Assembly: GCF_902713615.1 (NCBI RefSeq)
Contig: NC_052161.1
Coordinates: 2,252,892-2,316,891 of the forward strand
DNA length: 64,000 bases
Origin: Scyliorhinus canicula
Lineage: Eukaryota
Direction: 5' to 3'
Position numbers and translations under genes: made by a program. The first letter of the stretch is position 1, and every line of letters starts with the position of its first letter. The notes under the pieces are model-generated. The model was given only the letters and a program-made list of their open reading frames with translations. It was not told the DNA's origin and searched no databases. Shown one piece after another: positions 2,143-57,030 of the stretch.

Positions 2143-3532
2143 AACCCCGTGCTGCACCTGCCCTGGGAGTGTTTGATGGGGACAGTGTAGAGGGAGCTTT
2201 ACTCTGTATCTAACCCCGTGCTGTACCTGTCCTGGGAGTGTTTGATGGGGACAGTGTAGAGGGAGCTTTACTCTGTATCTAACCCCGTGCTGTACCGTCC
2301 TGGGAGTGTTTGATGGTGACAGTGTAGAGGGAGCTTCACTCTGTATCTAACCCCGTGCTGTACCTGTCCTGGGAGTGTTTGATGGAGACAGTGTAGAGGG
2401 AGCTTCACTCTGTATCTAACCCCGTGCTGTACCTGTCCTGGGAGTGTTTGATGGAGACAGTGTAGAGGGAGCTTTACTCTGTATCTAACCCCGTGCTGTA
2501 CCTGTCCTGGGAGTGTTTGATGGGGACAGTGTAGAGGGAGCTTTACTCTGTATCTAACCCCGTGCTGTTCCTGTCCTGGGAGTGTTTGATGGGGACACTG
2601 TGGAGCAGGGGTGGGCAAGCTTTCCCGTGCAAGGGCCACATTCAGAAATTCACAATTTTAAAGGGCCGCATAGTATATTAAGTAAAATAATTACTTCACC
2701 TGGTTATGATTCTGGGTGTCTCATATAGAACATAGAACAGTACAGCACAGAACAGGCCCTTCGGCCCTCGTTGTTGTGCTGAGAATGATCACCCTACTCA
2801 AGTCAACGTATCCACCCTATACCAGTAAGTAACCCAACAGCCCCCCCCCCCCCCATTAACCTTAAAAAATAAATAATTTTTTTTAAAAAATGACTTGGTG
2901 GGCCGCATAAAGACCTTTGGCGGGCCGCATAAAGACCTTTGGCGGGCCGCATAAAGACCTTTGGCGGGCCGCATGCGGCCCCATGGCCGGAGTTTGCCCA
3001 CCCCTGCTGTAGAGAGAGCTTTACTCTGTATCTAACCCCACGCAGTACCTGTCCTGGGAGTGTTTGATGGGGTCAGTGCAGAGGAAGCTTTACTCTGTAT
3101 CTAACCCTGTGCTGTACCTGTCCTGGGAGTGTTTGATGGGGACAGTGCAGAGGGAGCTTTACTCTGTATCTAACCCCGTGCTGTACCTGTCCTGGGAGTG
3201 TTTGATGGGGACAGTGTAGAGGGACCTTTACTCTGTATCTAACCCTGTGCTGTACCTGTCCTGGGAGTGTTTGATGGGGACAGTGTAGAGGGAGCTTTAC
3301 TCTGTATCTAACCCCGTGCTGTACCTGTCCTGGGAGTGTTTGATGGGGACAGTGTAGAGGGAGATTACTCTGTATCTAACCCCGTGCTGTACCTGTCCTG
3401 GGAGTGTTTGATGGGGACAGTGTAGAGGGAGCTTTACTCTGTATCTAACCCCGTGCTGTACCTGTCCTGGGAGTGTTTGATGGGGACAGTGTGGAAGGAG
3501 CTTTACTCTGTGTCTAACCCCGTGCAGTACCT
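2143..3532 (+). repeat. 69-bp satellite array 1 (about 14 units plus MITE)
   Basis: ccccgtgctgtacctgtcctgggagtgtttgatggggacagtgtagagggagctttactctgtatctaa. Confidence 0.97.
2606..3006. mobile_element. hAT-type MITE, copy 1, inserted in the 69-bp satellite
   Basis: TIR CAGGGGTGGGCAA...TTGCCCACCCCTG; 8-bp TSD ctgtggag/ctgtagag. Confidence 0.88.
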
Positions 3533-3674
3533 GTTCCGTCTCTAACGCACAGTTCCGCAATAGATTGTTTCCTTTACATAGCACTGGCTGGCGTCTATGC
3601 CACCTGTTACACAATTTAACATATTATCTTAGTATTATGGAATAATTGCAGTCATAAACAAACAGCTCACTCAC

Positions 3675-6041: not shown

Positions 6042-6524
6042 CTGGAAGAGAAACACAATCTTGTGATTTATTGCAGAGAGAACAGCAACAACACAGACAG
6101 GAAACATGGAAAAGCAGCAAATCCTAAATAAAATCCAATACACAATAGTTTTTTGCGTTTGGGCTGTGTGTGGGGGCTTCTCCCTCCGTGACGGGTCTCT
6201 TGTTTATAACGGAATTAACCCTCCCCCCCCGCCGATCCCGGGTTATGTACGGGAGCTGGGGGTGTCCCAGTGAGACCCCTCTTGTTCTGTTTGTCCACGT
6301 TTCCGAAGAGAGGATGTCATTGATGGTGTTGGGCAGGACTGGAGGTGGTGTTACCAAGTTTAACAAGACACAACCAAGAGACCAGCTGTTTATTAGAATC
6401 TGTCTCTCTTTATTGCCCAGATGTAAAACATGTTAAACACTTAATGAGGCTCATTTCAGCTCCTTCCGCCCAGTTGTTGGGCACCCTGTGTGTTTCTGCG
6501 TTACAGCTGCTTTATCAAACTAAC

Positions 6525-6632
6525 CTTCTGACCCTTGCGGTATGTCCCTACTTTCTGTGGGTCCAGATGCATGAAATCGACAGAACCAGTCAAACCGGAC
6601 AGGAACTGGAGAACCAGGCCATGTAAAGTCAC
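6525..6632 (-). CDS. PDCD11: PDCD11 exon (VTLHGLVLQFLSGLTGSVDFMHLDPQKVGTYRKGQK); not in ORF track
   Basis: ttttacag/GTTAGT, 108 nt, phase 0-0, VDFMHLDP motif as in RRP5. Confidence 0.9.
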
Positions 6633-6744
6633 CTGTAAAATAAAATTATAATGAGGGTCTAGTCATAAATCAACCATCTCGATAGGAGTTCAAATCAAAT
6701 CAGTGCACCTAAAGATGACTGCATAGGACACACACACACAGATT

Positions 6745-8752
6745 GAGAGGGAGCGAGGCAGGCAGAGAGGGAGCGAGGCAGGCAGAGAGGGAGCGAGGCA
6801 GGCAGAGACAGAGGGGGAGCGAGGCAGGCAGAGACAGAGAGGGAGCGAGGCAGGCAGAGACTGAAAGGGAGCGAGGCAGGCAGAGACAGAGAGAGCGACA
6901 GGCAGAGACAGAGAGGGAGCGAGGCAGGCAGAGACAGAGAGCGAGCGACAGGCAGAGACAGAGAGGGAGCGAGGCAGGCAGAGACAGAGAGCGAGCGACA
7001 GGCAGAGACAGAGAGGGAGCGAGGCAGGCAGAGACAGAGAGGGAGCGAGGCAGGCAGAGACAGAGAGGGAGCGAGCGACAGGCAGAGACAGAGAGGGAGC
7101 GACAGGCAGAGACAGAGAGAGCGACAGGCAGAGACAGAGAGGGAGCGACAGGCAGAGACAGAGAGGGAGCGACAGGCAGAGACAGAGAGAGCGACAGGCA
7201 GAGACAGAGAGAGCGACAGGCAGACAGAGGGAGCGACAGGCAGACAGAGGGAGCGACAGGCAGAGACAGAGAGAGCGACAGGCAGAGACAGAGAGAGCGA
7301 CAGGCAGAGACAGAGAGAGCGACAGGCAGAGACAGAGAGAGCGACAGGCAGAGACAGAGAGAGCGACAGGCAGAGACAGAGAGAGCGACAGGCAGAGACA
7401 GAGAGAGCGACAGGCAGAGACAGAGAGAGCGACAGGCAGAGACAGAGAGAGCAACAGGCAGAGACAGAGAGAGCGACAGGCAGAGACAGAGAGAGCGACA
7501 GGCAGAGACAGAGAGAGCGACAGGCAGAGACAGAGAGAGCGACAGGCAGAGACAGAGAGAGCGACAGGCAGAGACAGAGAGCGACAGGCAGAGACAGAGA
7601 GAGCGACAGGCAGAGACAGAGAGAGCGACAGGCAGAGACAGAGAGAGCGACAGGCAGAGACAGAGAGAGCGACAGGCAGAGACAGAGAGAGCGACAGGCA
7701 GAGACAGAGAGAGCGACAGGCAGAGACAGAGAGAGCGACAGGCAGAGACAGAGAGAGCGACAGGCAGAGACAGAGAGAGCGACAGGCAGAGACAGAGAGA
7801 GCGACAGGCAGAGACAGAGAGAGCGACAGGCAGAGACAGAGAGAGCGACAGGCAGAGACAGAGAGAGCGACAGGCAGAGACAGAGAGAGCGACAGGCAGA
7901 GACAGAGAGAGCGACAGGCAGAGACAGAGAGAGCGACAGGCAGAGACAGAGAGAGCGACAGGCAGAGACAGAGAGAGCGACAGGCAGAGACAGAGAGAGC
8001 GACAGGCAGAGACAGAGAGAGCGACAGGCAGAGACAGAGAGAGCGACAGGCAGAGACAGAGAGAGCGACAGGCAGAGACAGAGAGAGCGACAGGCAGAGA
8101 CAGAGAGAGCGACAGGCAGAGACAGAGAGAGCGACAGGCAGAGACAGAGAGAGCGACAGGCAGAGACAGAGAGAGCGACAGGCAGAGACAGAGAGAGCGA
8201 CAGGCAGAGACAGAGAGAGCGACAGGCAGAGACAGAGAGAGCGACAGGCAGAGACAGAGAGAGCGACAGGCAGAGACAGAGAGAGCGACAGGCAGAGACA
8301 GAGAGAGCGACAGGCAGAGACAGAGAGAGCGACAGGCAGAGACAGAGAGAGCGACAGGCAGAGACAGAGAGCGACAGGCAGAGACAGAGAGCGACAGGCA
8401 GAGACAGAGAGCGACAGGCAGAGACAGAGAGCGACAGGCAGAGACAGAGAGCGACAGGCAGAGACAGAGAGCGACAGGCAGAGACAGAGAGCGACAGGCA
8501 GAGACAGAGAGCGACAGGCAGAGACAGAGAGCGACAGGCAGAGACAGAGAGCGACAGGCAGAGACAGAGAGCGACAGGCAGACAGAGAGAGCGACAGGCA
8601 GAGACAGAGCGACAGGCAGAGACAGAGAGAGCGACAGGCAGAGACAGAGAGAGCGACAGGCAGAGACAGAGAGAGCGACAGGCAGAGACAGAGGGAGCGA
8701 CAGGCAGAGACAGAGAGAGCGACAGGCAGAGACAGAGAGAGCGACAGGCAGA
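6745..8752. repeat. 20-22-bp purine-rich minisatellite (gagacagagagagcgacaggca)n
   Basis: direct tandem repeat. Confidence 0.97.
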
Positions 8753-12659: not shown

Positions 12660-13569
12660 CTCGCCATGCAGTGCCCCAGGAGGCCATGCCAACTCGCAGT
12701 GCCCCACTCACCATGCCAGCTCAGCGCCCCACTCACCATGCCAGCTGTGCCCCACTCAATGCCAGCTGTGCCCCACTCACAATGCCAGCTCTGTGCCCCA
12801 CTCACCATGCCAGCTCAGCGCCCCACTCACCATGCCAGCTCAGCGCCCCACTCACCATGCCAGCTCAGCGCCCCACTCACCATGCCAGCTGTGCCCCCAC
12901 TCACCATGCCAGCTCAGCGCCCCACTCACCATGCCAGCTCAGTGCCCCACTCACCATGCCAGCTCTGTGCCCCACTCACCATGCCAGCTCTGTGCCCCAC
13001 TCACCATGCCAGCTCTGTGCCCCACTCACCATGCCAGCTCTGTGCCCCACTCACCATGCCAGCAGTGCCCCACTCACCATGCCAGCAGTGCCCCACTCAC
13101 CATGCCAGCTCTGTGCCCCACTCACCATGCCAGCTCGCAGCGCCCCAGGAGACAGTGCCCCACTCACCATGCCAGCTGTGCCCCACTCAATGCCAGCAGT
13201 GCCCCACTCACCATGCCAGCAGTGCCCCACTCACCATGCCAGCTCAGTGCCCCACTCACCATGCCAGCTCAGCGCCCCACTCACCATGCCAGCTGTGCCC
13301 CACTCACCATGCCAGCTGTGCCCCACTCACCATGCCAGCTGTGCCCCACTCACCATGCCAGCTGTGCCCCACTCACCATGCCAGCTGTGCCCCACTCAAT
13401 GCCAGCTGTGCCCCACTCAATGCCAGCTGTGCCCCACTCAATGCCAGCTGTGCCCCACTCAATGCCAGCTGTGCCCCACTCAATGCCAGCTGTGCCCCAC
13501 TCACCATGCCAGCTCGCAGTGCCCCAGGAGACAGTGCCCCACTCACAATGCCAGCTGTGCCCCACTCAC
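12660..13569 (-). repeat. 21-25-bp minisatellite made of the PDCD11 exon/donor junction
   Basis: unit AGCTGGCATG|GTGAGTGGGGC. Confidence 0.95.
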
Positions 13570-13731
13570 CATGCCAGCTCGCAGCGCCCCAGGAGACAGT
13601 GACTTGTTTACATCTTTCGGATTAATGGAGAGTTTCAAGCTGTGGTGGCTTGCTTTGGTCTTTCCGAGTTCAGAGACAGTGCACCGTACGACCATACCAG
13701 CACTGTACAGGTCTGAGAGAGCAGTCAGATC
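13570..13731 (-). CDS. PDCD11: PDCD11 exon (DLTALSDLYSAGMVVRC...LSINPKDVN...RAGM); most 5' exon visible
   Basis: 162 nt, cccag/GTGAGT, phase 0-0. Confidence 0.9.
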
Positions 13732-17832: not shown

Positions 17833-18528
17833 TCCGTGCTGTACCTGTCCTGGGAGTGTTTGATGGGGACAGTGTAGAGGGAGCTTTACTCTGTATCTAA
17901 CCCCGTCCTGTACATGTCCTGGGAGTGTTTGATGGGGACAGTGTAGAGGGAGCTTTACTCTGTATCTAAGCCCGTGCTGTACCTGTCCTGGGAGTGTTTG
18001 ATGGGGACAGTGTAGAGGGAGCTTTACTCTGTATCTAACCCGTGCTGTACCTGTCCTGGGAGTGTTTGATGGGGACAGTGTAGATGGAGCTTTACTCTGT
18101 ATCTAACCCCGTGCTGCACCTGTCCTGGGAGTGTTTGATGGAGACAGTGTAGAGGGAGCTTTACTCTGTATCTAACCCGTGCTGTACCTGTCCTGGGAGT
18201 GTTTGATGGGGACAGTGTCGAGGGAGCTTTACTCTGTATCTAACCCCGTGCTGTACCTGTCCTGGGAGTGTTTGATGGGGACAGTGTAGAGGGAGCTTTA
18301 CTCTGTATCTAACCCCGTGCTGTACCTGTCCTGGGAGTGTTTGATGGGGACAGTGTAGAGGGAGCTTTACTCTGTATCTAACCCCGTGCTGTACCTGTCC
18401 TGGGAGTGTTTGATGGGGACAGTGTAGAGGGAGCTTTACTCTGTATCTAACCCCGTGCTGTACCTGTCCTGGGAGTGTTTGATGGGGACAGTGTTGAGGG
18501 AGCTTTACTCTGTATCTAACCCCGTGCT
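17833..18528 (+). repeat. 69-bp satellite array 2 (about 10 units)
   Basis: same unit. Confidence 0.97.
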
Positions 18529-22462: not shown

Positions 22463-22640
22463 CTTGTGTCCTGTAAGGATCCTAACACAGTTGCCATTCA
22501 GCACGTCCCAGAGCCGGATGGTCCTGTCTGCAGACCCGGTCACCACGTAATTCGAGTTGGGATGAAATCTTGTGCAGGTGACATCAGAGAGGTGACCTGA
22601 GAATATTCGCAAGGGCTGGTAGTGGTCAGTCACCCAAAGC
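22463..22640 (-). CDS. TAF5: TAF5 exon 8 (WD40; LWVTDHYQPLRIF...TGHK)
   Basis: 178 nt, phase 2-0. Confidence 0.95.
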
Positions 22641-22842
22641 CTGAGTAATGTAAGGTCCCAAATTGTTAACAAATACATCATAGTAACTCTCCACCCACTA
22701 TGTTCCTGGCCCCAGGGAGAGACAGTCCAGCTTCATTAAAGTCTATCTGTACAAAGTTCAGTACCGATTGTCAAAATGCAGATGTTTTAGAAAAGCTCAG
22801 ACAAACGTGGTCGGGCACATTCAGTGATATGAAGAAAGACTC

Positions 22843-23732
22843 AGGGTCTGTACGTACTGCAGGGCCTGTACGTACTGCAGGGTCTGTACGTACTGCAGGG
22901 TCTGTACGTACTGCAGGGCCTGTACGTACTGCAGGGCCTGTACGTACTGCAGGGCCTGTACGTACTGCAGGGTCTGTACGTACTGCAGGGCCTGTACGTA
23001 CTGCAGGGTCTGTACGTACTGCAGGGCCTGTACGTACTGCAGGGCCTGTACGTACTGCAGGGCCTGTACGTACTGCACGGTCTGTACGTACTGCAGGGTC
23101 TGTACGTACTGCAGGGCCTGTACGTACTGCAGGGTCTGTACGTACTGCAGGGTCTGTACGTACTGCAGGGCCTGTACGTACTGCAGGGTTCTGTACGTAA
23201 TGCAGGGTCTGTACGTACTGCAGGGCCTGTACGTACTGCAGGGTCTGTACGTACTGCAGGGTCTGTACGTACTGCAGGGCCTGTACGTACTGCAGGGTCT
23301 GTACGTACTGCAGGGTTCTGTACGTACTGCAGGGTCTGTACGTACTGCAGGGTCTGTACGTACTGCAGGGTTCTGTACGTACTGCAGGGTCTGTACGTAC
23401 TGCAGGGTCTGTACGTACTGCAGGGCCTGTACGTACTGCAGGGTCTGTACGTACTGCAGGGCCTGTACGTACTGCAGGGTCTGTACGTACTGCAGGGCCT
23501 GTACGTACTGCAGGGCCTGTACGTACTGCAGGGCCTGTACGTACTGCAGGGCCTGTACGTACTGCAGGGCCTGTACGTACTGCAGGGTCTGTACGTACTG
23601 CAGGGCCTGTACGTACTGCAGGGCCTGTACGTACTGCAGGGCCTGTACGTACTGCAGGGCCTGTACGTACTGCAGGGTCTGTACGTACTGCAGGGTTCTG
23701 TACGTACTGCAGGGTCTGTACGTACTGCAGGG
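22843..23732. repeat. 18-bp minisatellite (tctgtacgtactgcaggg)n, about 49 units
   Basis: direct tandem repeat. Confidence 0.97.
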
Positions 23733-23832
23733 TATCAGGAGGGTGGAAGTGAAGAAGATATTTCACCAAGATATGGAGTCCATTCATATCAATGTAGTCA
23801 TTGAAATGGAAAAATGAAGCTGAATTGCTGAG

Positions 23833-24211
23833 TCACAACCCCACACTCACCCTGCCACTCGATCGTGACCCCACATTCGCACATTCACCCGTGCCACTCG
23901 ATTGTGACCCCACATTCACACACTTACTTTGCCACTAGATCATGACCCCACATTCGCACATTCACCGTGCCACTCGATTGTGACCCCACATTCGCACACT
24001 CGCCGTGCCACTCGATTGTGACCCCACATTCATACACTTACTTTGCCACTATTGTGACCCCACTCACGCACTCTGCCACTCGATCGTGACCCCACATTCG
24101 CACTCACCATGCCACTCGATCGTGACCCCACATTCGCACACTCACCGTGCTACTCGATTGTGAGCCCACTCACTCTGCCACTCGATCGTGACCCCACATT
24201 TGCAAACTCAC
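23833..24211 (-). repeat. ~38-bp minisatellite made of the TAF5 exon 7/donor junction
   Basis: unit GGTCACGATCGAGTGGCACG|GTGAGT... Confidence 0.92.
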
Positions 24212-24376
24212 CGTGCCACTCGATCGTGACCTCCTGAAATGAAGTAGTAGCCGTACGGAGAAAACTGTGTATCCCACACTGGGTAGTTATGTCCTTTGTA
24301 GCCGACGAGGCAGGTGAAGGTCTGCAGACTCCAGAGTCTCACTGTGCCATCCTCTGAGCTGGACAGCAGATAATTT
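24212..24376 (-). CDS. TAF5: TAF5 exon 7 (NYLLSSSEDGTVRLWSL...GGHDRVAR); not in ORF track
   Basis: 165 nt, phase 2-2, GTGAGT donor. Confidence 0.93.
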
Positions 24377-24820
24377 CTGAGTGAGAGAGTGCAGAAGCGT
24401 TAAACACAGGCAGATTTCCAGGCTGCAAAGTCAAGTCTGTCTTGGTCAAAATCTTCCTCGTTTGTCGAGGGTTCCACTGCTGCGAGTGCACTAAACTCAG
24501 CGTTGATCCTCTGGGTCCAAATCAATTCGAACTGTTTTCTCTTTTCTACTCTCTCAGGATGTCAAATCCATGAAATTCCTCAGCTCTCCACTACAATTTA
24601 CAGGCTTCAAAATCCTCTCTCCCCAATTAATCTCTCCTCTCTCGCACCTTTCATCCATGGATGTACTCTACCCTCCCCTCACGAGTAGAACTGACTCGAT
24701 GGAGAGTGTGTGTGTGTGTGGGATACAGCAGATCTGCAGCACAGCGGAGTTAGTCAGGAGGTGCAGGCTTTGCTATGCCAGAGTCTAGGAATATGGCAGC
24801 GAGTGATATTACAGCTTCCC

Positions 24821-25190
24821 ATAAGACCATAAGACATAGGAGTGGAAGTAAGCCATTCGGCCCATCGAGTCCACTCCGCCATTCAATCATGGCTGATGGG
24901 CATTTCAACTCCACCTACCAGCATTCTCCCCGTAGCCCTTAATTCCTCGCGACATCAAGAATTTATCTATCTCTGCCTTGAAGCCATTTAGTGTCCCGGC
25001 CTCCACTGCACTCCGCGGCAATGAATTCCACAGGCCCACCACTCTCTGGCTGAAGAAATGTCTCCGCATTTCTGTTCTGAATTTACCCCCTCTAATTCTA
25101 AGGCTGTGCCCACGGGTCCTCGTCTCCTCGCCTAATGGAAACAGTTTCTTTGCGTCCACCCTTTCTAAGCCATGTATTATCTTGTAAGTT
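24821..25190 (-). mobile_element. CR1 3' end
   Basis: TRGHSL..R.FFSQRVV.LWNSLP motif plus short-repeat tail. Confidence 0.8.
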
Positions 25191-25539
25191 CCCGTCTGAG
25201 GTGCATGCACAGTTTCCTGCACGGTGATGTGAAAGATCCCATACCACGATTCTGAGTGCTCCAACCCATGGCACTGCCAATACCAATCCCCCAACCATCA
25301 CTAAATAAAGCTAATCTATGATCAAGTTACTGCTATCAGTGAGAGCCTGTTGTGTGAATGTTTCAAACACACCAATAATTATTACAATTCAGAACACTTC
25401 AGGGGGTGCGAAGCACTTGGGGATGTCCCAGGGTCATGACAGGAGCTACGGAAATGAAAGTTCTTTCTGACCAGTGCCTGGTCTGTTCATTTTGTTCGAA
25501 ACAAAGACGTTTACTGGTTTCCAAGTAGCTGCTTCTTAC

Positions 25540-25669
25540 CTGTCAGGACTGAAGCTTGTCCCATACACTGGGCCACCATGTCCCAGTAACATTTTAAACT
25601 CACACGCAGTTTTCTCATCCATTATCCGCTCCAGCACATCTTCCGACTCCTTGTCGATTAAACTGAGAT
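25540..25669 (-). CDS. TAF5: TAF5 exon 6 (DLSLIDKESEDVLERIMDEK...FSPD)
   Basis: 130 nt, phase 1-2. Confidence 0.93.
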
Positions 25670-26479
25670 CTAACGGAGAAAGACAAACCAGTTAGCGAGA
25701 CTGCTCATACTGGGACTGAGAGCAACACACTTCCCGTAGCACAGCCAATCTCAGAAAAGGCTAGAAATTTTATGTATGTGTATCTTGATGTATAAAAATC
25801 AAATCGTAGAGTAAATGCCCTGAGAGATGGAAATCTCCTTGACTGCCCTGAGCTACAACAAACTGGTCTTGTGTGTAGAAGTGTACAGGGCTGTATGATG
25901 AATTCACTGCTGTGCTCCGAAAGCTAGGTGATTTGAAACAATCCTGTTGGACTTTAACCTGGTGTTGTAAGACTTCTTACTGTTTTCAGGAAGAGTTCCA
26001 GAGACTCTCAAAACTCTGAGAGAAAACATTTCTCCTCAGCTCTGTCTGAAATGGGTGACTACTTACTTTTAAACAGTGACCCCCCAGTTCTAGATTCTTC
26101 AACAAGAGGAAACATCCTCTCCACATTCGCCCTGTCAACACCCGTCAGGATCTTAAAGGCTTTAAGTCACCTCTTACTCTTCTAAATTCCAACAGATACA
26201 AATCAAACCTTTCCTCATGTGACAACCAGCCCATTCCTGATATTAGTCTAATGAACCTTCTTTGAACTGCTTCTAATGTATAACAATAATTGCTTATTGT
26301 CACACGTAGGCTTCAATGAAGTTACTGTGAAGTTACTGTGGCCCCTAGTCGCCACATTCCGGTGCCTGTTCGGGGAGGCCGGTACAGAAATTGAACCGTG
26401 CTGCTGCCTTGATCTGCATTTCAAGCCAGCAATTTAGCCCAGTGTGCTAAACCAGCCTTTATTTACATATTTCCTTAAA

Positions 26480-29429: not shown

Positions 29430-30537
29430 GCCCGTGCTGTACCTGCCCTGGGAGTGTCTGATGGGGACAGTGTAGAGGGAGCTTTACTCTGTATCTAACC
29501 CCGTGCTGTACCTGTCCTGGGAGTGTTTGATGGGGACAGTGTAGAGGGAGCTTTACTCTGTATCTAACCCCGTGCTGTACCTGTCCTGGGAGTGTCTGAT
29601 GGGGACAGTGTAGAGGGAGCTTTACTCTGTATCTAACCCCGTGCTGTACCTGTCCTGGGAGTGTTTGATGGGGACAGTGTAGAGGGAGCTTTACTCTGTA
29701 TCTAACCCCGTGCTGTACCTGTCCTGGGAGTGTTTGATGGGGACAGTGTAGAGGGAGCTTTACTCTGTATCTAACCCCGTGCTGTACCTGTCCTGGGAGT
29801 GTTTGATGTGGACTGTGTAGTGGGAGCTTTACTCTGTATCTAATCCCGTGCTGTACCTGCCCTGGGAGTGTTTGATGGGGACAGTGTAGAGGGAGCTTTA
29901 CTCTGTATCTAACCCCGTGCTGTACCTGTCCTGGGAGTGTTTGATGTGGACTGTGTAGTGGGAGCTTTACTCTGTATCTAACCCCGTGCTGTACCTGTCC
30001 TGGGAGTGTTTGATGGGGACAGTGCAGAGGGAGCTTTACTCTGTATCTAACCCCGTGCTGTACCTGTCCTGGGAGTGTTTGATGAGGACAGTGTAGAGGG
30101 AGCTTTACTCTGTATCTAACCCCGTGCTGTACCTGTCCTGGGAGTGTTTGATGGGGACAGTGTAGAGGGAGCTTTACTCTGTATCTAACCCCGTGCTGTA
30201 CCTGTCCTTGGAGTGTTTGATGGGGACAGTGTTGAGGGAGCTTTACTCTGTATCTAACTCCGTGCTGTACCTGTCCTGGGAGTGTTTGATGGGGACAGTG
30301 TAGAGGGAGCTTTACTCTGTATCTAACCCCGTGCTGTACCTGTCCTGGGAGTGTTTGATGCAGACAGTGTAGGGGGAGCTTTACTCTGTATCTAACCCCG
30401 TGCTGTACCTGTCCTGGGAGTGTTTGAAGGGGACAGTGTAGAGGGAGTTTTACTCTGTATCTAACCCCGTGCTGTACCTGTCCTGGGAGTGTTTGATGGG
30501 GACAGTGTGGAGGAAGCTTTACTCTGTCTCTAACCCT
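29430..30537 (+). repeat. 69-bp satellite array 3 (about 16 units)
   Basis: same unit. Confidence 0.97.
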
Positions 30538-49089: not shown

Positions 49090-52000
49090 TGTTGGAGATG
49101 CACTCGTATGGCTAGTCCAGTCCAGATGTTGAGAAGGTGCGGGGCTGGAGGAGGTTTTGTGGGTGAAGGTGGAGGCAGGGTTTTTGTGAGGGGTCAGGGT
49201 TGCGGGTGTTGGCGATGGCTCTGCTCTTTTTGCCCCGGGGAGGTATCCGGGGAGTCCGGTCGTGGTGGTCATGCTGAAATTATGGAGGCAGTTTCGGCTG
49301 CGCTTTAAGTTGGGAGCAGCATTGAAACTGATGCTGATTCGGGGGAACAATGGGTTTGAGCCCGGGAGGGTGGATGGGAGGTTTCGGGGATGGGAGGAGT
49401 GAGGGGCGGTGGAAAGAAAGGATCTGTTCCTCGAGGATGGTTCTGGAGGAGGGGGTGGGGTGTGGGTGCTGGAGGAGGGGGTGTGAGGTACTGGAGGAGG
49501 GGGTGTGGGTGCTGGAGGAGGGGGTGTGGGTGCTGGAGGAGGGGGTGTGGGTGCTGGAGGAGGGGGTGTGGGTGCTGGAGGAGGGGGTGTGGGTGCTGGA
49601 GGAGGGGGTGTGGGTGTGGGTGCTGGAGGAGGGGGTGTGGGTGCTGGAGGAGGGGGTGTGGGTGACGTGAGGGAAAGGTTTCAGTTACATGCTGGTTGGG
49701 ATTTTGTGAAAATGGTCTGTGTGACCTTTCCAGTGACACCGCCCCCTCTTTGCTGGAGGGGGTGATGTCAGTGATGGGGTTGGGGGGGCGGGGGTCATCT
49801 CGGCGATTTATGGGAGGATTTTGGAGGAGGATAGGGCATCTCTGGAGGGGGTTAAGGCCAAGTGGGAGGAGGAGCTGGGGATGGCGCTGGAGGAGGGGGT
49901 GGGGTGTGGGTGCTGGAGGACGGGGTGTGGGTGCTGGAGGAGGGGGTGGGGTGTGGGTGCTGGAGGAGGGGGTGGGGTGTGGGCGCTGGAGGAGGGGGTG
50001 TGGGTGCTGGAGGAGGGGGTGGGGTGTGGGTGCTGGAGGAGGGGGTGGGGTGTGGGCGCTGGAGGAGGGGGTGTGGGTGCTGGAGGAGGGGGTGGGGTGT
50101 GGGTGCTGGAGGAGGGAGTGGGGTGTGGGTGCTGGAGGAGGGGGTGGGGTGTAAGGTGCTGGAGGAGGGGGTGGGGTGTGAGGTGCTGGAGGAGGGGGTG
50201 GGGATGGTGCTGGAGGAGGGGGTGGGGTGTGGGTGCTGGAGGAGGGGGTGGGGTGTGGGTGCTGGAGGAGGGGGTGGGGTGTGGGTGCTGGAGGAGGGGT
50301 GGGGTGTGAGGTGCTGGAGGAGGGGGTGGGGTGTGAGGTGCTGGAGGAGAGGGTGTGGGTGCTGGAGGAGGGGGTGGGGTGTGGGTGCTGGAGGAGGGGT
50401 TGTGGGTGCTGGAGGAGGGGGTGTGGGTGCTGGAGGAGGGGGTGTGGGTGCTGGAGGAGGGGGTGTGGGTGCTGGAGGAGGGGGTGTGGGTGCTGGAGGA
50501 GGGGGTGTGGGTGCTGGAGGAGGGGGTGTGGGTGCTGGAGGAGGGGGTGGGGATGGTGCTGGAGGAGGGGGTGGGGTGTGAGGTGCTGGAGGAGGGGGTG
50601 GTGTGTGGGTGCTGGAGGAGGTGGTGGGGTGTGAGGTGCTGGAGGAGGGGGTGGGGTGTGAGGTGCTGGAGGAGGGGGTGTGAGGTGCTGGAGGAGGGGG
50701 TGGGGTGTGGGTGCTGGAGGAGGGGGTGTGGGTGCTGGAGGAGGGGGTGTGAGGTGCTGGAGGAGGGGGTGGGGTGTGAGGTGCTGGAGGAGGGGGTGGG
50801 GTGTGAGGTGCTGGAGGGGGGGTGTGAGGTGCTGGAGGAGGGGGTGGGGTGTGGGTGCTGGAGGAGGGGGTGGGATGTGAGGTGCTGGAGGAGGGGGTGG
50901 GGTGTGAGGTGCTGGAGGAGGGGGTGGGGTGTGGGTGCTGGAGGAGGGGGTGGGGTGTGAGGTGCTGGAGGAGGGGGTGGGGTGTGAGGTGCTGGATGAG
51001 GGGGTGTGAGGTGCTGGAGGAGGGGGTGGGGTGTGGGTGCTGGAGGAGGGGGTGTGGGTGTGGGTGCTGGAGGAGGGGGTGGGGTGTGAGGTGCTGGAGG
51101 AGGGGGTGTGAGGTGCTGGAGGAGGGGGTGGGGTGTGAGGTGCTGGAGGAGGGGGTGGGGTGTGAGGTGCTGGAGGAGGGGGTGTGAGGTGCTGGAGGAG
51201 GGGGTGGGGTGTGAGGTGCTGGAGGAGGGGGTGGGGTGTGAGGTGCTGGAGGGGGGGTGTGAGGTGCTGGAGGAGGGGGTGGGGTGTGGGTGCTGGAGGA
51301 GGGGGTGGGGTGTGAGGTGCTGGAGGAGGGGGTGTGGGTGCTGGAGGAGGGGGTGTGGGTGCTGGAGGAGGAGCTGGGGATGGTGCTGGAGGAGGGGGTG
51401 GGGTGTGAGGTGCTGGAGGAGGGGGTGTGGGTGTGGGTGCTGGAGGAGGGAGTGGATGCTGGAGGAGGGGGTGTGGGTGCTGGAGGAGGGGGTGTGGGTG
51501 TTGGAGGAGGGGGTGGGGTGCTGGAGGAGGGGGTGTGGGCGCTGGAGGAGGAGGTGGGGTGTGAGGTGCTGGAGGAGGGGGTGTGAGGTGCTGGAGGAGG
51601 GGGTGGGGTGTGGGTGCTGGAGGAGGGGGTGGGGTGTGGGTGCTGGAGGAGGGGGTGTGGGTGCTGGAGGAGGGGGTGTGAGGTCCTGGAGGAGGGGGTG
51701 TGGGTGCTGGAGGAGGGAGTGGGGTGCTGCGGAGAATGAATGCCCCAACCCCATGTGCGAGGCTGGGTTTGATACAGTTAACGGTCGTGCACAGAGCACA
51801 GCTGATGAAATTGGGGATGAGCCGGCAGTTGGAGGGAGTGAAGGATATTTGTGGGCAGTGTGGGAGGGGCCCGGACAATCACACACACGTGTTCTGGTCC
51901 TGCCTAAAGCTGGAGAAGTTTTGGGGGGTATCTTTCAGCACCATGTCTGCGATCCTGCGCATGGATTTAGAGCTCAGTCCCCTGGGGGCCATATCCGGGA

Positions 52001-52656: not shown

Positions 52657-53167
52657 GTGAGTCTTTCCTGTAACATATGTCACTTTTGCCAATGACTAAA
52701 AGACAGTGAAGTTACTACTTGGGAGCGTGCGGAAGGTTCGGGTCGATAGTTAGAACAGCAGCACTAGCAGGAGAGCCGGTAACCAGAGGTTTATCATCGA
52801 TAATTAAATAACCAGCATGGAGATGAGGAAAGAGATGGGAAAGTTATTGTGTCAGGAAGGCGATGTCTGAAAGGACGGTGGAGGCAGATTCAACAGTAAC
52901 TTTCAAAATGGATAAAGACTTGGAAGGAAAAGAAAACATTTGCTGGGTGATGAGGAACATGCAGGAAAGTGGGACTGATGGGATAGACCGAGAATAGGCA
53001 TGATGGGCCAAATGGCCGCTTGTGCTGATTATTCTATGATTCGATAACTTGGAAAAACAGCAAAATAAAGGGAGCAATAAAGATTAGAGTGGACTGCATT
53101 GCCGAAAGGAATTTTTAATCTTATATTCCTGAAAAGGGAATATGGGAGGGGGGGGGGGGGGGGGGGG

Positions 53168-54862
53168 CGAGGATGGAGGGAGGGTGAGGATGGAGGGGGT
53201 GAGGATTGAGGGCAGTGAGGATGGAGGGAGTGAGGATGGAGGGAGGGTGAGGATGGAGGGAGGGTGAGGATGGAGGGGGTGAGGATGGAGGGGTGAGGAT
53301 GGAGGGGGTGAGGATGGAGGGGGTGAAGATGGAGGGGGTGAGGATGGAGGGGGTGAGGATGGAGGGGGTGAGGATGGAGGGGGTGAGGATGGAGGTGGTG
53401 AGGATGGAGGGGGTGAGGATGGAGGGGGTGAGGATGGAGGGGGTGAGGATGGAGGGGGGGTGAGGATGGAGGTGGTGAGGATTGAGGGCGGTGAGGATGG
53501 AGGGGGTGAGGATGGAGGGGGTGAGGATGGAGGGGGATGAGGATGGAGGGGGTGAGGATGGAGGGGGTGAGGATGGAGGGGGTGAGGATGGAGGGGGTGA
53601 GGATGGAGGGGGTGAGGATGGAGCGGGTGAGGATGGAGGGGGTGAGGATGGAGGGGGTGAGGATAGAGGGGGTGAGGATGGAGGGGGTGAGGATGGAGGG
53701 AGTGAGGATGGAGGGGGTGAGGATGGGGGTGAGGATGGAGGGGGTGAGGATGGAGGGGGTGAGGATGGAGGGGGTGAGGATGGAGGGTGTGAGGATGGGG
53801 GTGAGGATGGAGGGGGTGAGGATGGAGGGGGTGAGAATGGAGGGTGTGAGGATGGGGGTGAGGATGGAGGGGGTGAGGATGGAAGGGGTGAGGATGGGGG
53901 TGAGGATGGAGGGTGAGGATGGAGGGCGGTGAGGATGGGGGTGAGGATGGAGGGGGTGAGGATGGGGGTGAGGATGGAGGGGGTGAGGATGGGGAGTTTA
54001 GGATGAAGGGGTTTAGGATGGAGGGAGGCGAAGATGGAGAGAGTGAAGACTGAGGGCGGTAAGGATTGAGGGTGGTGAAGATTGAGGGCAGTGAGGATGG
54101 AGGGGTGAGGATGGAGGGGGTGAGGATAGAGGGGGTGAGGATGGAGCGGGTGAGGATGGAGGGGGTGAGGATGGAGTGGGTGAGGATGGAGGGGGTGAGG
54201 ATGGAGGGGGTGAGGATGGAGGGAGTGAGGATGGAGGGGGTGAGGATGGGGGGGTTAGGATGGAGGGGGTGAGGATGGAGGGTGAGGATGGAGGGTGAGG
54301 ATGGAGGGTGAGGATGGGGGTTTAGGATGAAGGGGGTTAGGATGGAGGGAGGCGAAGATGGAGAGAGTGAAGACTGAGGGCGGTAAGGATTGAGGGTGGT
54401 GAGGATTGAGGGCAGTGAGGATGGAGGGGGTGAGGATGGAGGGGGTGAGGATGGAGGGGGTGAGGATAGAGGGGGTGAGGATAGAGGTGGTGAGGATGGA
54501 GGGGGTGAGGATGGAGGGGGTGAGGATGGAGGGGGTGAGGATGGAGGGGGTGAGGATGGAGGGGTGAGGATGGAGGGGGTGAGGATGGAGGGGGTGAGGA
54601 TAGAGGGGGTGAGGATAGAGGGGGTGAGGATTGAGGGCGGTGAGGATGGTGGGGGTGAGGATGGAGGGGTGAGGATGGAGGGGGTGAGGATGGAGGGAGT
54701 GAGGATGGAGGGGGTGAGGATAGAGGGGGTGAGGATTGAGGGCGTTGAGGATAGAGGGGGTGAAGATTGAGGGCGGTGAGGATAGAGGGGGTGAGGATTG
54801 AGGGCGGTGAGGATAGAGGGGGTGAGGATTGAGGGCGATGAGGATTGAGGGCAGTGAGGATG
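53168..54862. repeat. 15-bp G-rich minisatellite (gaggatggagggggt)n
   Basis: direct tandem repeat; lies in the putative lipase intron 1. Confidence 0.96.
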
Positions 54863-55723: not shown

Positions 55724-57012
55724 GCAGGTACAGCACACCGTTAAAAACAGAGTAAAGCTCCCTCCACACTGTCCCCATCAAACACTCCCAGGACAGGTAC
55801 AGCACACCGTTAAAAACAGAGTAAAGCTCCCTCCACACTGTCCCCGTCAAACACTCCCAGGACAGGTACAGCACGGGGTTAGATACAGAGTAAAGCTCCC
55901 TCTACACTCTCCCCATCAAACACGCCCAGGACAGGTACAGCACGGGGTTAGATACAGAGTAAAGCACCCTCTACACTGTCCCCATCAAACACTCCCAGGA
56001 CAGGTACAGCACGGGGTTAGATACAGAGTAAAGCTCCCTCTACGCTGTCCCCATCAAACACTCCCAGGACAGGTACAGCACGGGGTTAGATACAGAGTAA
56101 AGCTCCCTCTACACTGTCCCCATCAAATACTCCCAGGACAGGTACAGCACAGGGTTAATACAGAGTAAAGCTCCCTCTACACTGTCCCCATCAAATACTC
56201 GCAGGACAGGTACATCACGGGGTTAGATACAGAGTAAAGCTCCCTCTACACTGTCCCCATCAAACACTCCCAGGACAGGTACAGCACGGGGTTAGATACA
56301 GAGTAAAGCTCCCTCTACGCTGTCCCCATCAAACACTCCCAGGACAGGTACAGCACGGGGTTAGATACAGAGTAAAGCTCCCTCTACACTGTCCCCATCA
56401 AACACTCCCAGGGCAGGTACAGCACGGGGTTAGATACAGAGTAAAGCTCCCTCTGCACTGTCCCCATCAAACACTCCCAGGACAGGTACAGCACCGGGGT
56501 TAGATACAGAGTAAAGCTCCCTCTACATTTCCCCATCAAACACTCCCAGGACAGGTACAGCACGGGGTTAGATACAGAGTAAAGCTCCCTCTGCACTGTC
56601 CCCATCAAACACTCCCAGGACAGGTACAGCACGGGGTTAGATACAGAGTAAAGCTCCCTCTACACTGTCCCCATCAAACACTCCCAGGACAGGTACAGCA
56701 CGGGGTTAGATACAGAGTAAAGCTCCCTCTACATTTCCCCATCAAACACTCCCAGGACAGGTACAGCACGGGGTTAGACACAGAGTAAAGCTCACTCTGC
56801 ACTGTCCCCATCAAACACTCCCAGGACAGGTACAGCACGGGGTTAGATACAGAGTAAAGCTCCCTCTACACTGTCCCCATCAAACACTCCCAGGACAGGT
56901 ACAGCACGGGGTTAGATACAGAGTAAAGCTCCCTCTACATTTCCCCATAAAACACTCCCAGGACAGGTACAGCACGGGGTTAGATACAGAGTAAAGCTCC
57001 CTCTACATTTCC
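55724..57012 (-). repeat. 69-bp satellite array 4 (about 18 units, inverted)
   Basis: reverse complement of the same unit. Confidence 0.97.
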
Positions 57013-57030
57013 CCGAACAAACACTTGGGA

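What the first reader, a model, noticed from the sequence alone, without database searches (positions are those of the whole stretch)
23833..24232. Second donor-seeded array: TAF5 exon 7 junction repeated about 10 times
Seen: ~38-nt units consisting of the last ~20 exon nt (GGTCACGATCGAGTGGCACG, coding GHDRVAR) plus the intron start. Units carry GTGAGT, GTGAAT or GTAAGT donors. Read-through gives CGG TGA immediately, so every decoy is non-productive. The sequence is unrelated to the PDCD11 array but the architecture is the same, suggesting a general bias in this genome.
Basis: partly seen in the sequence, partly recalled or inferred. Interest (0 to 1): 0.7.

Follow-up and report, generated by a model that had tools for sequence, protein, structure and literature searches.

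The report
Splice-donor minisatellite in shark TAF5 intron
The last 20 bases of a TAF5 exon plus its splice donor have been copied ten more times, head to tail, into the following intron of this shark genome, yet RNA joins only the first, genuine donor. It is a real but ordinary example of a repeat type already known from human genes such as F7.

Summary
On the minus strand, a TAF5 WD40 exon (24376..24212) ends inside the first unit of an 11-unit minisatellite (23833-24231, modal unit 38 nt). Each unit holds about 20 exon-derived nt plus the intron start. Five of the ten spare donors score as high as the true one, and five are weakened. Using any spare donor would give CGG TGA straight after the exon.

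The array is not an assembly artefact. Contigs from an independent DNA run and from an RNA run tile it in the same order as the reference.

In RNA from two studies only the first donor is seen joined to exon 8 (5 reads and one 747-nt spliced contig). The two poly(A) runs have zero depth in the array. Differences between units are mostly CpG decay (26% against 3.5%). The GT dinucleotide decays neither faster nor slower than the rest.

This is the known exon-boundary minisatellite class (human F7 IVS7, IFI6, CBS, LMNB2, PDGF; PMC1557585). It is most likely a tolerated by-product of a minisatellite-rich genome, since 31% of this window is tandem arrays.

The scan has already noted the same kind at PDCD11 in this window and at about eight other genes on other DNA of this genome. 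A genome-wide bias towards donors is neither shown nor excluded.

The parts
24212..24376 (-). TAF5 coding exon (7th coding exon counted in this window), 165 nt. It ends with CG, the first two bases of an Arg codon.
   Evidence: The translation matches human TAF5 residues 556-609 and Pfam WD40. RNA joint 25540->24376 is seen in 5 reads and one contig, and the splice at 24212|24211 is seen in RNA.
24206..24214 (-). Genuine 5' splice site ACG|GTGAGT (+1 G at 24211).
   Evidence: Five X23 reads and the X5 747-nt contig leave the reference here and continue with the first bases of exon 8. Approximate PWM score is 9.9 bits.
24194..24231 (-). Unit 0 of the minisatellite: 20 exon nt (GGTCACGATCGAGTGGCACG) plus the first 18 intron nt.
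23833..24193 (-). Ten further units (lengths 28, 38, 36, 32, 36, 38, 38, 38, 39 nt, and a last unit of about 30 nt that merges into unique intron).
   Evidence: Independent contigs.
23845..24148 (-). Span holding the five full-strength spare donors, with +1 G at 24145 (ACG|GTGAGT), 24107 (ATG|GTGAGT), 24041 and 23927 (AAA|GTAAGT) and 23850 (AGG|GTGAGT). The weakened ones are at 24173 (AGA|GTGAGT), unit 4 (GTGCGT), 24003 (GCGAGT), 23965 and 23888 (GTGAAT).
   Evidence: Approximate PWM scores of 9.5-10.1 bits against 9.9 for the true site, and 6.4-6.8 or lower for the weakened ones.
22842..23733 (-). Second, unrelated minisatellite in the same intron (18 nt x 49). With the 38-nt array it makes up about 81% of the 1571-nt intron 7 (24211..22641).
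22463..22640 (-). Next TAF5 exon (G CTT TGG GTG ACT GAC CAC ... = (R)LWVTDH...), acceptor cag at 22643-22641.
   Evidence: Its first 28-30 bases are the loose-end consensus of the spliced reads and contig.

Best explanation
This is an exon-boundary minisatellite. A segment of about 30-38 bp, made of the last 20 nt of the TAF5 exon and the first 10-18 nt of the intron, was duplicated in tandem, probably by replication slippage at a short GGT/GG microhomology. It then expanded by slippage or unequal exchange to 11 units, all lying on the intron side. The gene tolerates it because the spliceosome uses the most upstream of a row of equivalent donors, so the mRNA is unchanged. Any rare use of a spare donor would hit a TGA one codon later and be removed by nonsense-mediated decay. 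The spare copies then drift neutrally, mainly by CpG decay. Shown here: the anatomy, the reality of the array, first-donor use at the depth available, and the CpG-dominated variation. Inferred: the slippage origin, neutrality, and the first-donor rule as the reason the array is tolerated.
For: Anatomy. Exon identity and junction. RNA: in X23, 5 reads cross exon 6->7, and 5 reads leave at 24211 with a consensus equal to the start of exon 8. In X5, from another study, a 747-nt contig at depth 40 joins exon 6, exon 7 and exon 8 through the first donor. X22 and X23 have zero depth in every array bin. X5 depth in the array is 0.6-12, like intron 6 at 6-9, against 35-40 on the exons. Five spare donors equal the true one in score, so position, not strength, decides. 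This is what Borensztajn et al. 2006 showed experimentally for the F7 IVS7 37-bp minisatellite, and that paper lists IFI6, CBS, LMNB2 and PDGF as further cases (PMC1557585). Neutral drift: differences from the unit consensus are 19/72 in CpG columns against 9/259 elsewhere (p 4e-8). GT shows 1/20, no different from the rest (p 0.53). Small indels differ between individuals. Multi-unit periods of 66, 104 and 142 nt indicate block duplications. There is no special RNA structure (z +0.93). Background: 17 arrays cover 31% of the window.
Against: RNA depth is low (about 12 reads on the exon, 5 across the donor). Nonsense-mediated decay would hide spare-donor products, so low-level use is not excluded. 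The 9-nt donor motif is more variable among spare units than the rest of the unit (16/86 against 13/265, p 2e-4; non-CpG columns only, 6/66 against 4/213, p 0.013). That could mean selection against strong decoys rather than pure neutrality. However, several of these variants are shared between units by block duplication, which leaves about 4 independent events, so the excess is not significant. Two such arrays in one window is more than random seeding predicts.
Confidence: 0.8

Rival explanations
1. The row of donors is functional. It could be a cluster of U1 snRNP binding sites that helps define exon 7 or protects the transcript from premature cleavage. Alternatively it could be a set of poison donors that lowers TAF5 output through unproductive splicing and nonsense-mediated decay.
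For: Six equal-strength donors lie within 360 nt. Every spare-donor product carries a premature stop. The kind recurs in this genome according to earlier notes, which I have not checked.
Against: No read or contig uses a spare donor, and array depth equals the intron background. Half the spare donors are already degraded and variation is CpG-driven. The stop is an automatic result of exon phase plus GTRAG. Two non-shark vertebrate contigs have no array at this junction, and in one the intron is about 100 nt. The human counterparts are silent (PMC1557585).
Confidence: 0.07
2. Origin by a donor-specific bias. In this genome 5' splice junctions would be preferred seeds or preferred survivors of minisatellites. 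One route is that the G-rich GGTGAGTG(G) motif on the non-template strand favours slippage. Another is that arrays at donors are tolerated while arrays at acceptors or inside exons are purged. This concerns how the array arose and is compatible with its being neutral now.
For: Two of about 20 donors in the window carry such arrays against 0.2 expected (P about 0.02), and no acceptor does. Both arrays are G-rich on the sense strand. Earlier notes list about nine donor arrays and one acceptor array in this genome; these are leads only.
Against: The window was chosen post hoc. Fifteen of 17 arrays here have no donor motif. The notes also list arrays built from an acceptor, RAG signals and CTCF sites. 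First readers notice arrays that contain familiar motifs, so the counts are biased. With about 1% of junctions expected to be spanned by chance at this array density, a dozen cases in the DNA scanned so far needs no special bias.
Confidence: 0.2
3. Assembly artefact: the array, or its copy number, was created by mis-assembly of repeats.
For: The region is repeat-rich, and no single independent contig spans the whole array.
Against: Contigs from an independent DNA run and from a run of another study cover every unit in the reference order, with overlaps of 17-43 nt. They include a 542-nt contig running from intron 6 through the exon into units 0-2. The units are individually distinguishable.
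Confidence: 0.02

Closest known systems
Human F7 intron 7 (IVS7) 37-bp VNTR minisatellite (Borensztajn et al. 2006, PMC1557585)
   Same: The first monomer spans the exon 7/intron 7 boundary, so the donor is reiterated downstream. The unit length is nearly the same (37 against 38 nt). There are 5-9 copies in F7 against 11 here. Only the most upstream donor is used, although the pseudo-sites are equivalent.
   Different: The F7 unit holds only 4 exon nt against 20 here. The F7 pseudo-sites are identical to each other, whereas here five are intact and five are degraded. In F7 some pseudo-sites would keep the reading frame, whereas here all stop at once. The function of the pseudo-sites was tested by mutagenesis in F7 and is untested here. 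Copy-number polymorphism is shown in F7 and not here.
Human CBS 31-bp VNTR c.1444_1467+7(16_21) at exon 13/intron 13 (PMC2630376; PMC1557585)
   Same: The unit is mostly exon-derived (24 exon nt plus 7 intron nt), similar to the 20 + 18 split here, and it forms a tandem row of donors in the intron.
   Different: There are 16-21 copies. [quoted passage not shown] No such use was seen here.
Human IFI6 (6-16) intron 2, LMNB2 and PDGF boundary minisatellites (listed in PMC1557585)
   Same: They are minisatellites whose first monomer spans an exon-intron boundary. In LMNB2 and PDGF only the authentic donor is used.
   Different: Unit lengths differ (81-100 bp in PDGF and LMNB2). IFI6 constitutively uses the two nearest pseudo-sites.
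PDCD11 donor array in this window (12660-13600), plus LAMTOR1, FPGT, GEMIN5, ARL16, MHC class I and ZFYVE1-like arrays noted earlier in this genome
   Same: The architecture is the same: exon end plus donor repeated into the intron. Where those reports could check RNA, they found first-donor use. In my own scan of this window the PDCD11 array carries 26 strong donors on the sense strand.
   Different: The unit sequences are unrelated, so these are independent events. The TAF5 array is small (11 units against 20-364) and more decayed. I did not re-test the cases outside this window.

Membership tests
Exon-boundary (F7 IVS7-type) minisatellite | Head-to-tail array of a 10-100 bp monomer. | tested here: met
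   Period 38, 11 units. Far above chance.
Exon-boundary (F7 IVS7-type) minisatellite | The first monomer spans the exon-intron junction, so the donor sequence is reiterated in the intron. | tested here: met
   Exon end fixed by translation and the TAF5 match and by spliced RNA. Units 1-10 repeat 18-20 exon nt plus a GT, GC or weakened GT site.
Exon-boundary (F7 IVS7-type) minisatellite | Only the most upstream donor (or the first few) is used in normal transcripts. | tested here: met
   Five reads (X23) and one 747-nt contig (X5, another study) use the first donor. No read or loose end falls at a spare donor, and there is zero array depth in two poly(A) runs. Depth is low, so use below roughly 10-30% in reads, or a few percent by X5 contig depth, is not excluded.
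Exon-boundary (F7 IVS7-type) minisatellite | Copy number varies between individuals (VNTR). | tested here: inconclusive
   A 2-nt and a 1-nt indel differ between individuals. Short-read contigs cannot measure copy number.
Exon-boundary (F7 IVS7-type) minisatellite | Pseudo-sites are functional when the upstream site is inactivated. | not testable with these tools
   This needs a minigene experiment. By sequence, five spare sites score the same as the true site.
Regulated unproductive splicing (poison 5' splice sites coupled to nonsense-mediated decay) | Alternative donors are used at a measurable, regulated level and give a premature stop. | tested here: not met
   The premature stop is present for every spare donor, but no use was detected. 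Decay could mask it.
Regulated unproductive splicing (poison 5' splice sites coupled to nonsense-mediated decay) | The poison element is conserved across species. | tested here: inconclusive
   Only two non-shark vertebrate contigs were obtained, and neither has an array. No other shark sequence could be reached.

The most novel reading that the evidence does not exclude
Junction minisatellites in this shark genome are truly enriched at 5' splice sites and depleted at 3' splice sites and exon interiors. The cause would be that the first-donor (5'->3') rule of splice-site choice makes only donor-side expansions harmless. The genome would then be a large natural experiment showing that this rule holds across jawed vertebrates. 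A bolder version is that the rows of U1 sites have been co-opted for exon definition or transcript protection.
Probability: 0.2. Interest if true: 0.55.

Novelty: new member of a known kind. Interest (0 to 1): 0.27.

Why it matters
On its own it matters little, because TAF5 mRNA is unaffected. Its value is as one more natural test of how the spliceosome picks among identical donors. Here six equal-strength donors, each preceded by the same 20 exon-derived bases, sit in a row in an essential gene of a cartilaginous fish, and only the first is seen in mRNA. That matches the oriented-scanning result for human F7 and suggests the rule is old. It is also a practical warning for gene annotation and variant calling in shark genomes, where gene predictors may choose a spare donor. 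Whether such arrays pile up at donors genome-wide is the question worth answering.

Tried and rejected
I used 23740-25700 instead and read donor use from loose ends whose letters equal the start of exon 8.

2. Other sharks. The one profile-free protein search with the NTD2 exon gave fragments and distant TAF5-like proteins, none close enough to use as a shark orthologue. A search with the exon 7 open frame gave 13 short fragments from other vertebrates. The two I fetched (L001 from a metagenome, L002 from a Logan contig) are not sharks and have no array. So the age of the array within sharks could not be determined. I did not fetch P0150, because its exon residues look like the mammalian or human form as I recall it.

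4. RNA structure that might hide the spare donors: none found (z +0.93).

5. 'GT decays faster or slower': no difference (1/20 against 9/259).

6. Idea that the unit is a dispersed repeat or transposon piece: rejected, because all copies lie at this locus.

7. Idea that arrays in this genome generally carry donor motifs: rejected for this window, where 15 of 17 carry none.

8. A literature search for a described catshark-wide bias found nothing.

The species name (small-spotted catshark) comes from earlier notes, not from my own test.

Full report
WHAT IS THERE

The window carries TAF5 on the minus strand. Open frames on that strand give, in order, a LisH/NTD2 first exon, a second NTD2 exon and a series of WD40 exons. 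The stretch 24375..24212 translates to NYLLSSSEDGTVRLWSLQTFTCLVGYKGHNYPVWDTQFSPYGYYFISGGHDRVA. It aligns end to end with residues 556-609 of human TAF5 in solved TFIID structures.

The exon is 24376..24212 (165 nt) and ends with CG, the first two bases of an Arg codon. The donor GT is at 24211-24210. The next exon starts at 22640 behind a cag acceptor. Intron 7 is therefore 1571 nt long. About 81% of it is two unrelated minisatellites: the 38-nt array studied here and an 18-nt x 49 array at 22842-23733. Each exon was searched separately by reference.

THE ARRAY

Tandem Repeats Finder reports period 38 with 8.9 copies, plus higher-order periods of 66, 104 and 142. Parsing the sense strand gives 11 units.

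- Unit 0 (24231..24194) is the last 20 exon nt, GGTCACGATCGAGTGGCACG, plus the first 18 intron nt.
- Units 1-10 repeat both halves.
- Three units (1, 4 and the terminal unit 10) are a short form of 28-32 nt that lacks about 8 nt of the intron half.
- The last unit runs into unique intron at ...GTGAGTGTGGGG|TTGTGACTCAG.

The exon-derived 18-mer is found 10 times within three mismatches where 0.04 is expected, and only at this locus. The intron-derived part is found 6 times where 0 is expected.

IS IT REAL DNA?

X6 contigs cover 23740-23882, 23866-23972, 24074-24139 and 24111-24652. The last of these runs from intron 6 through the exon into units 0-2. An X5 contig covers 23930-24103. Together they tile every unit in the reference order. 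The only differences are a 1-nt deletion at 23888 and a CT insertion behind 24048, and both restore a 38-nt unit length. An assembly artefact is very unlikely, although exact copy number needs long reads.

WHICH DONOR IS USED?

- In X23, five reads join exon 6 to exon 7 (25540->24376).
- In X23, five reads leave the reference at 24211 with a loose-end consensus that is the reverse complement of the first 30 bases of exon 8.
- In X5, a 747-nt contig at depth 40 joins exon 6, exon 7 and exon 8 through the same first donor.
- X22 and X23 have zero depth in all array bins.
- In X5 the array has depth 0.6-12, like intron 6 (6-9), against 35-40 on the exons.
- No loose end or joint was listed at any spare donor among those shown; 44 less-supported loose ends were not displayed (all).

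The numbers are small, and nonsense-mediated decay would hide mis-spliced products. Low-level use is therefore not excluded.

STRENGTH AND CONSEQUENCE OF THE SPARE DONORS

I scored the sites with an approximate vertebrate 5' splice-site matrix, typed from my memory of published human frequencies.

- The true site, ACG|GTGAGT, scores 9.9 bits.
- Five spare sites are equal to it: 24145, 24107, 24041, 23927 and 23850, at 9.5-10.1 bits.
- Five are weakened: AGA|GTGAGT at 6.8, two GTGAAT at about 6.4, one GTGCGT and one GC site.

Strength therefore does not explain the choice of the first site. Position does.

Every possible exon extension (38 to 361 nt) reads CGG TGA at once. This stop is not special to the array. 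It follows from the exon phase plus a GTRAG donor. The open frames of the same exon in 8 of the 11 closest vertebrate fragments also end ...HDRVAR-stop.

HOW THE UNITS EVOLVE

Against the unit consensus, spare units differ at 19 of 72 cells in CpG columns and at 9 of 259 cells elsewhere (odds ratio about 10, p 4e-8). This is the signature of methylated DNA drifting without constraint.

The GT dinucleotide shows 1 change in 20 cells, which is no different from the rest (p 0.53).

The whole 9-nt donor motif is more variable than the rest of the unit: 16/86 against 13/265, or 6/66 against 4/213 without CpG columns. However, the GTAAGT and GTGAAT variants are each shared by two units three or two units apart. 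These are block duplications, in line with the higher-order periods. Only about four independent events remain, and the excess is not significant. A weak selection against strong decoys stays possible.

The array RNA has no unusual structure (z +0.93).

MOST LIKELY HISTORY (INFERENCE)

The short units, and the way the array ends, suggest an ancestral junction of ...GGTCACGATCGAGTGGCACG|GTGAGTGTGG GGTTGTGAC... A slip between the two GGT microhomologies would have duplicated about 30 nt. An 8-nt gain then made the 38-nt form, which spread by unequal exchange. Unit 0 itself now carries the long form, so the genuine junction takes part in the array's turnover. All growth is on the intron side, and the coding sequence is untouched.

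COMPARISON WITH WHAT IS KNOWN

This is a described class. Borensztajn et al. 2006 (PMC1557585) study the human F7 IVS7 37-bp VNTR, whose first monomer spans the exon 7 boundary. Its four to eight identical pseudo-sites are functional but silent, because the most upstream site wins by what the authors call oriented scanning.

That paper lists further boundary minisatellites:

- IFI6/6-16, with 25 pseudo-sites, of which the two nearest are used.
- CBS intron 13, with two pseudo-sites used.
- LMNB2 and PDGF, where only the authentic site is used.

The CBS repeat is written c.1444_1467+7(16_21), that is 24 exon nt plus 7 intron nt (PMC2630376). This is close to the 20 + 18 split here. The TAF5 array meets the testable defining features of the class. 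Copy-number polymorphism and pseudo-site competence remain untested.

THE 'GENERAL BIAS' IDEA

In this window 17 large arrays cover 31% of the bases. Only two of them, PDCD11 at 12699-13514 and this one, carry strong donors in most units, both on the sense strand. A third (53145-54862, GGAGGGGGTGAGGAT) has a few strong donors, and 14 have none. Donor motifs are therefore not the usual content of arrays here.

Random seeding of 17 arrays would span about 0.2 of roughly 20 donor junctions. Seeing two has P of about 0.02. The window was singled out for exactly this feature, so the figure is only suggestive.

Earlier notes of this scan are unchecked leads. They list the same kind at PDCD11 and at about eight further genes of this genome. 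They also list arrays built from an acceptor, from RAG signals and from CTCF sites. At the array density seen here, about 1% of junctions would be spanned by chance, so a dozen cases needs no special mechanism. The apparent excess of donor cases over acceptor cases is worth a proper genome-wide test. It would be expected if only donor-side expansions are harmless under the first-donor rule.

LIMITS

No other shark sequence could be reached. The exon 7 open-frame search returned only non-shark vertebrate fragments. The two contigs I fetched (L001, L002) show the same exon end and no array, and in L002 the intron is about 100 nt. I did not fetch one hit (P0150) whose residues look like the mammalian or human form as I recall it. 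The age of the array within sharks is unknown. The species name comes from earlier notes.

VERDICT

The array is real and was correctly described. It is a new member of a known kind, most likely tolerated rather than useful. Interest is low to moderate.

Noticed in passing
window 22842-23733: The same intron holds a second, unrelated minisatellite: 18 nt x 49 copies at 95% identity. The unit contains the palindromes GTACGTAC and CTGCAG, and two unit variants (GGGCC/GGGTC) occur in blocks. Together the two arrays make up about 81% of intron 7. This repeat caused the read-laying tool to refuse the whole intron.
   Followed up: partly
window 2143-2605, 3008-3534, 17834-18528, 29431-30536, 55725-57025: Five separate arrays of one 69-nt unit lie in PDCD11 and TAF5 introns and upstream, the last one in the opposite orientation. 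This is a dispersed, array-forming repeat family. In all, 17 arrays cover 31% of the window.
   Followed up: no
window 53145-54862: A 15-nt array (GGAGGGGGTGAGGAT x 115) carries 15 strong-scoring donor-like sites on the + strand, without any recognised exon next to it. The neighbouring G-rich arrays at 49457-51729 are similar in flavour.
   Followed up: no
window 24048 and 23888: Small indel differences between individuals inside the array: a CT insertion behind 24048 in the X5 contig and a 1-nt deletion at 23888 in the X6 contig. Each restores a 38-nt unit.
   Followed up: partly
window 24796-25191 (intron 6): A retroelement-like fragment has read and contig depths thousands of times higher than its surroundings in all four runs, so it is a very high-copy, transcribed interspersed repeat. 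The open frame at 24908-25297 looks like the tail of a LINE reverse-transcriptase ORF.
   Followed up: no
window 6746-8752: A 22-nt x 91 array, pyrimidine-rich on the sense strand, ends about 100 nt upstream of a probable PDCD11 exon (open frame 6504-6662). It contains no exon sequence, so it is not an acceptor-junction array.
   Followed up: no
window 23871-24210: Each long unit contains a nine-codon mini-ORF, ATG TGG GGT CAC GAT CGA GTG GCA CGG TGA (MWGHDRVAR-stop). It is a by-product of copying the exon end and is probably meaningless.
   Followed up: no
L002 1-700: In one non-shark vertebrate contig the orthologous TAF5 intron is only about 100 nt, against 1571 nt here. This shows how much of the shark intron is recent repeat.
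   Followed up: partly
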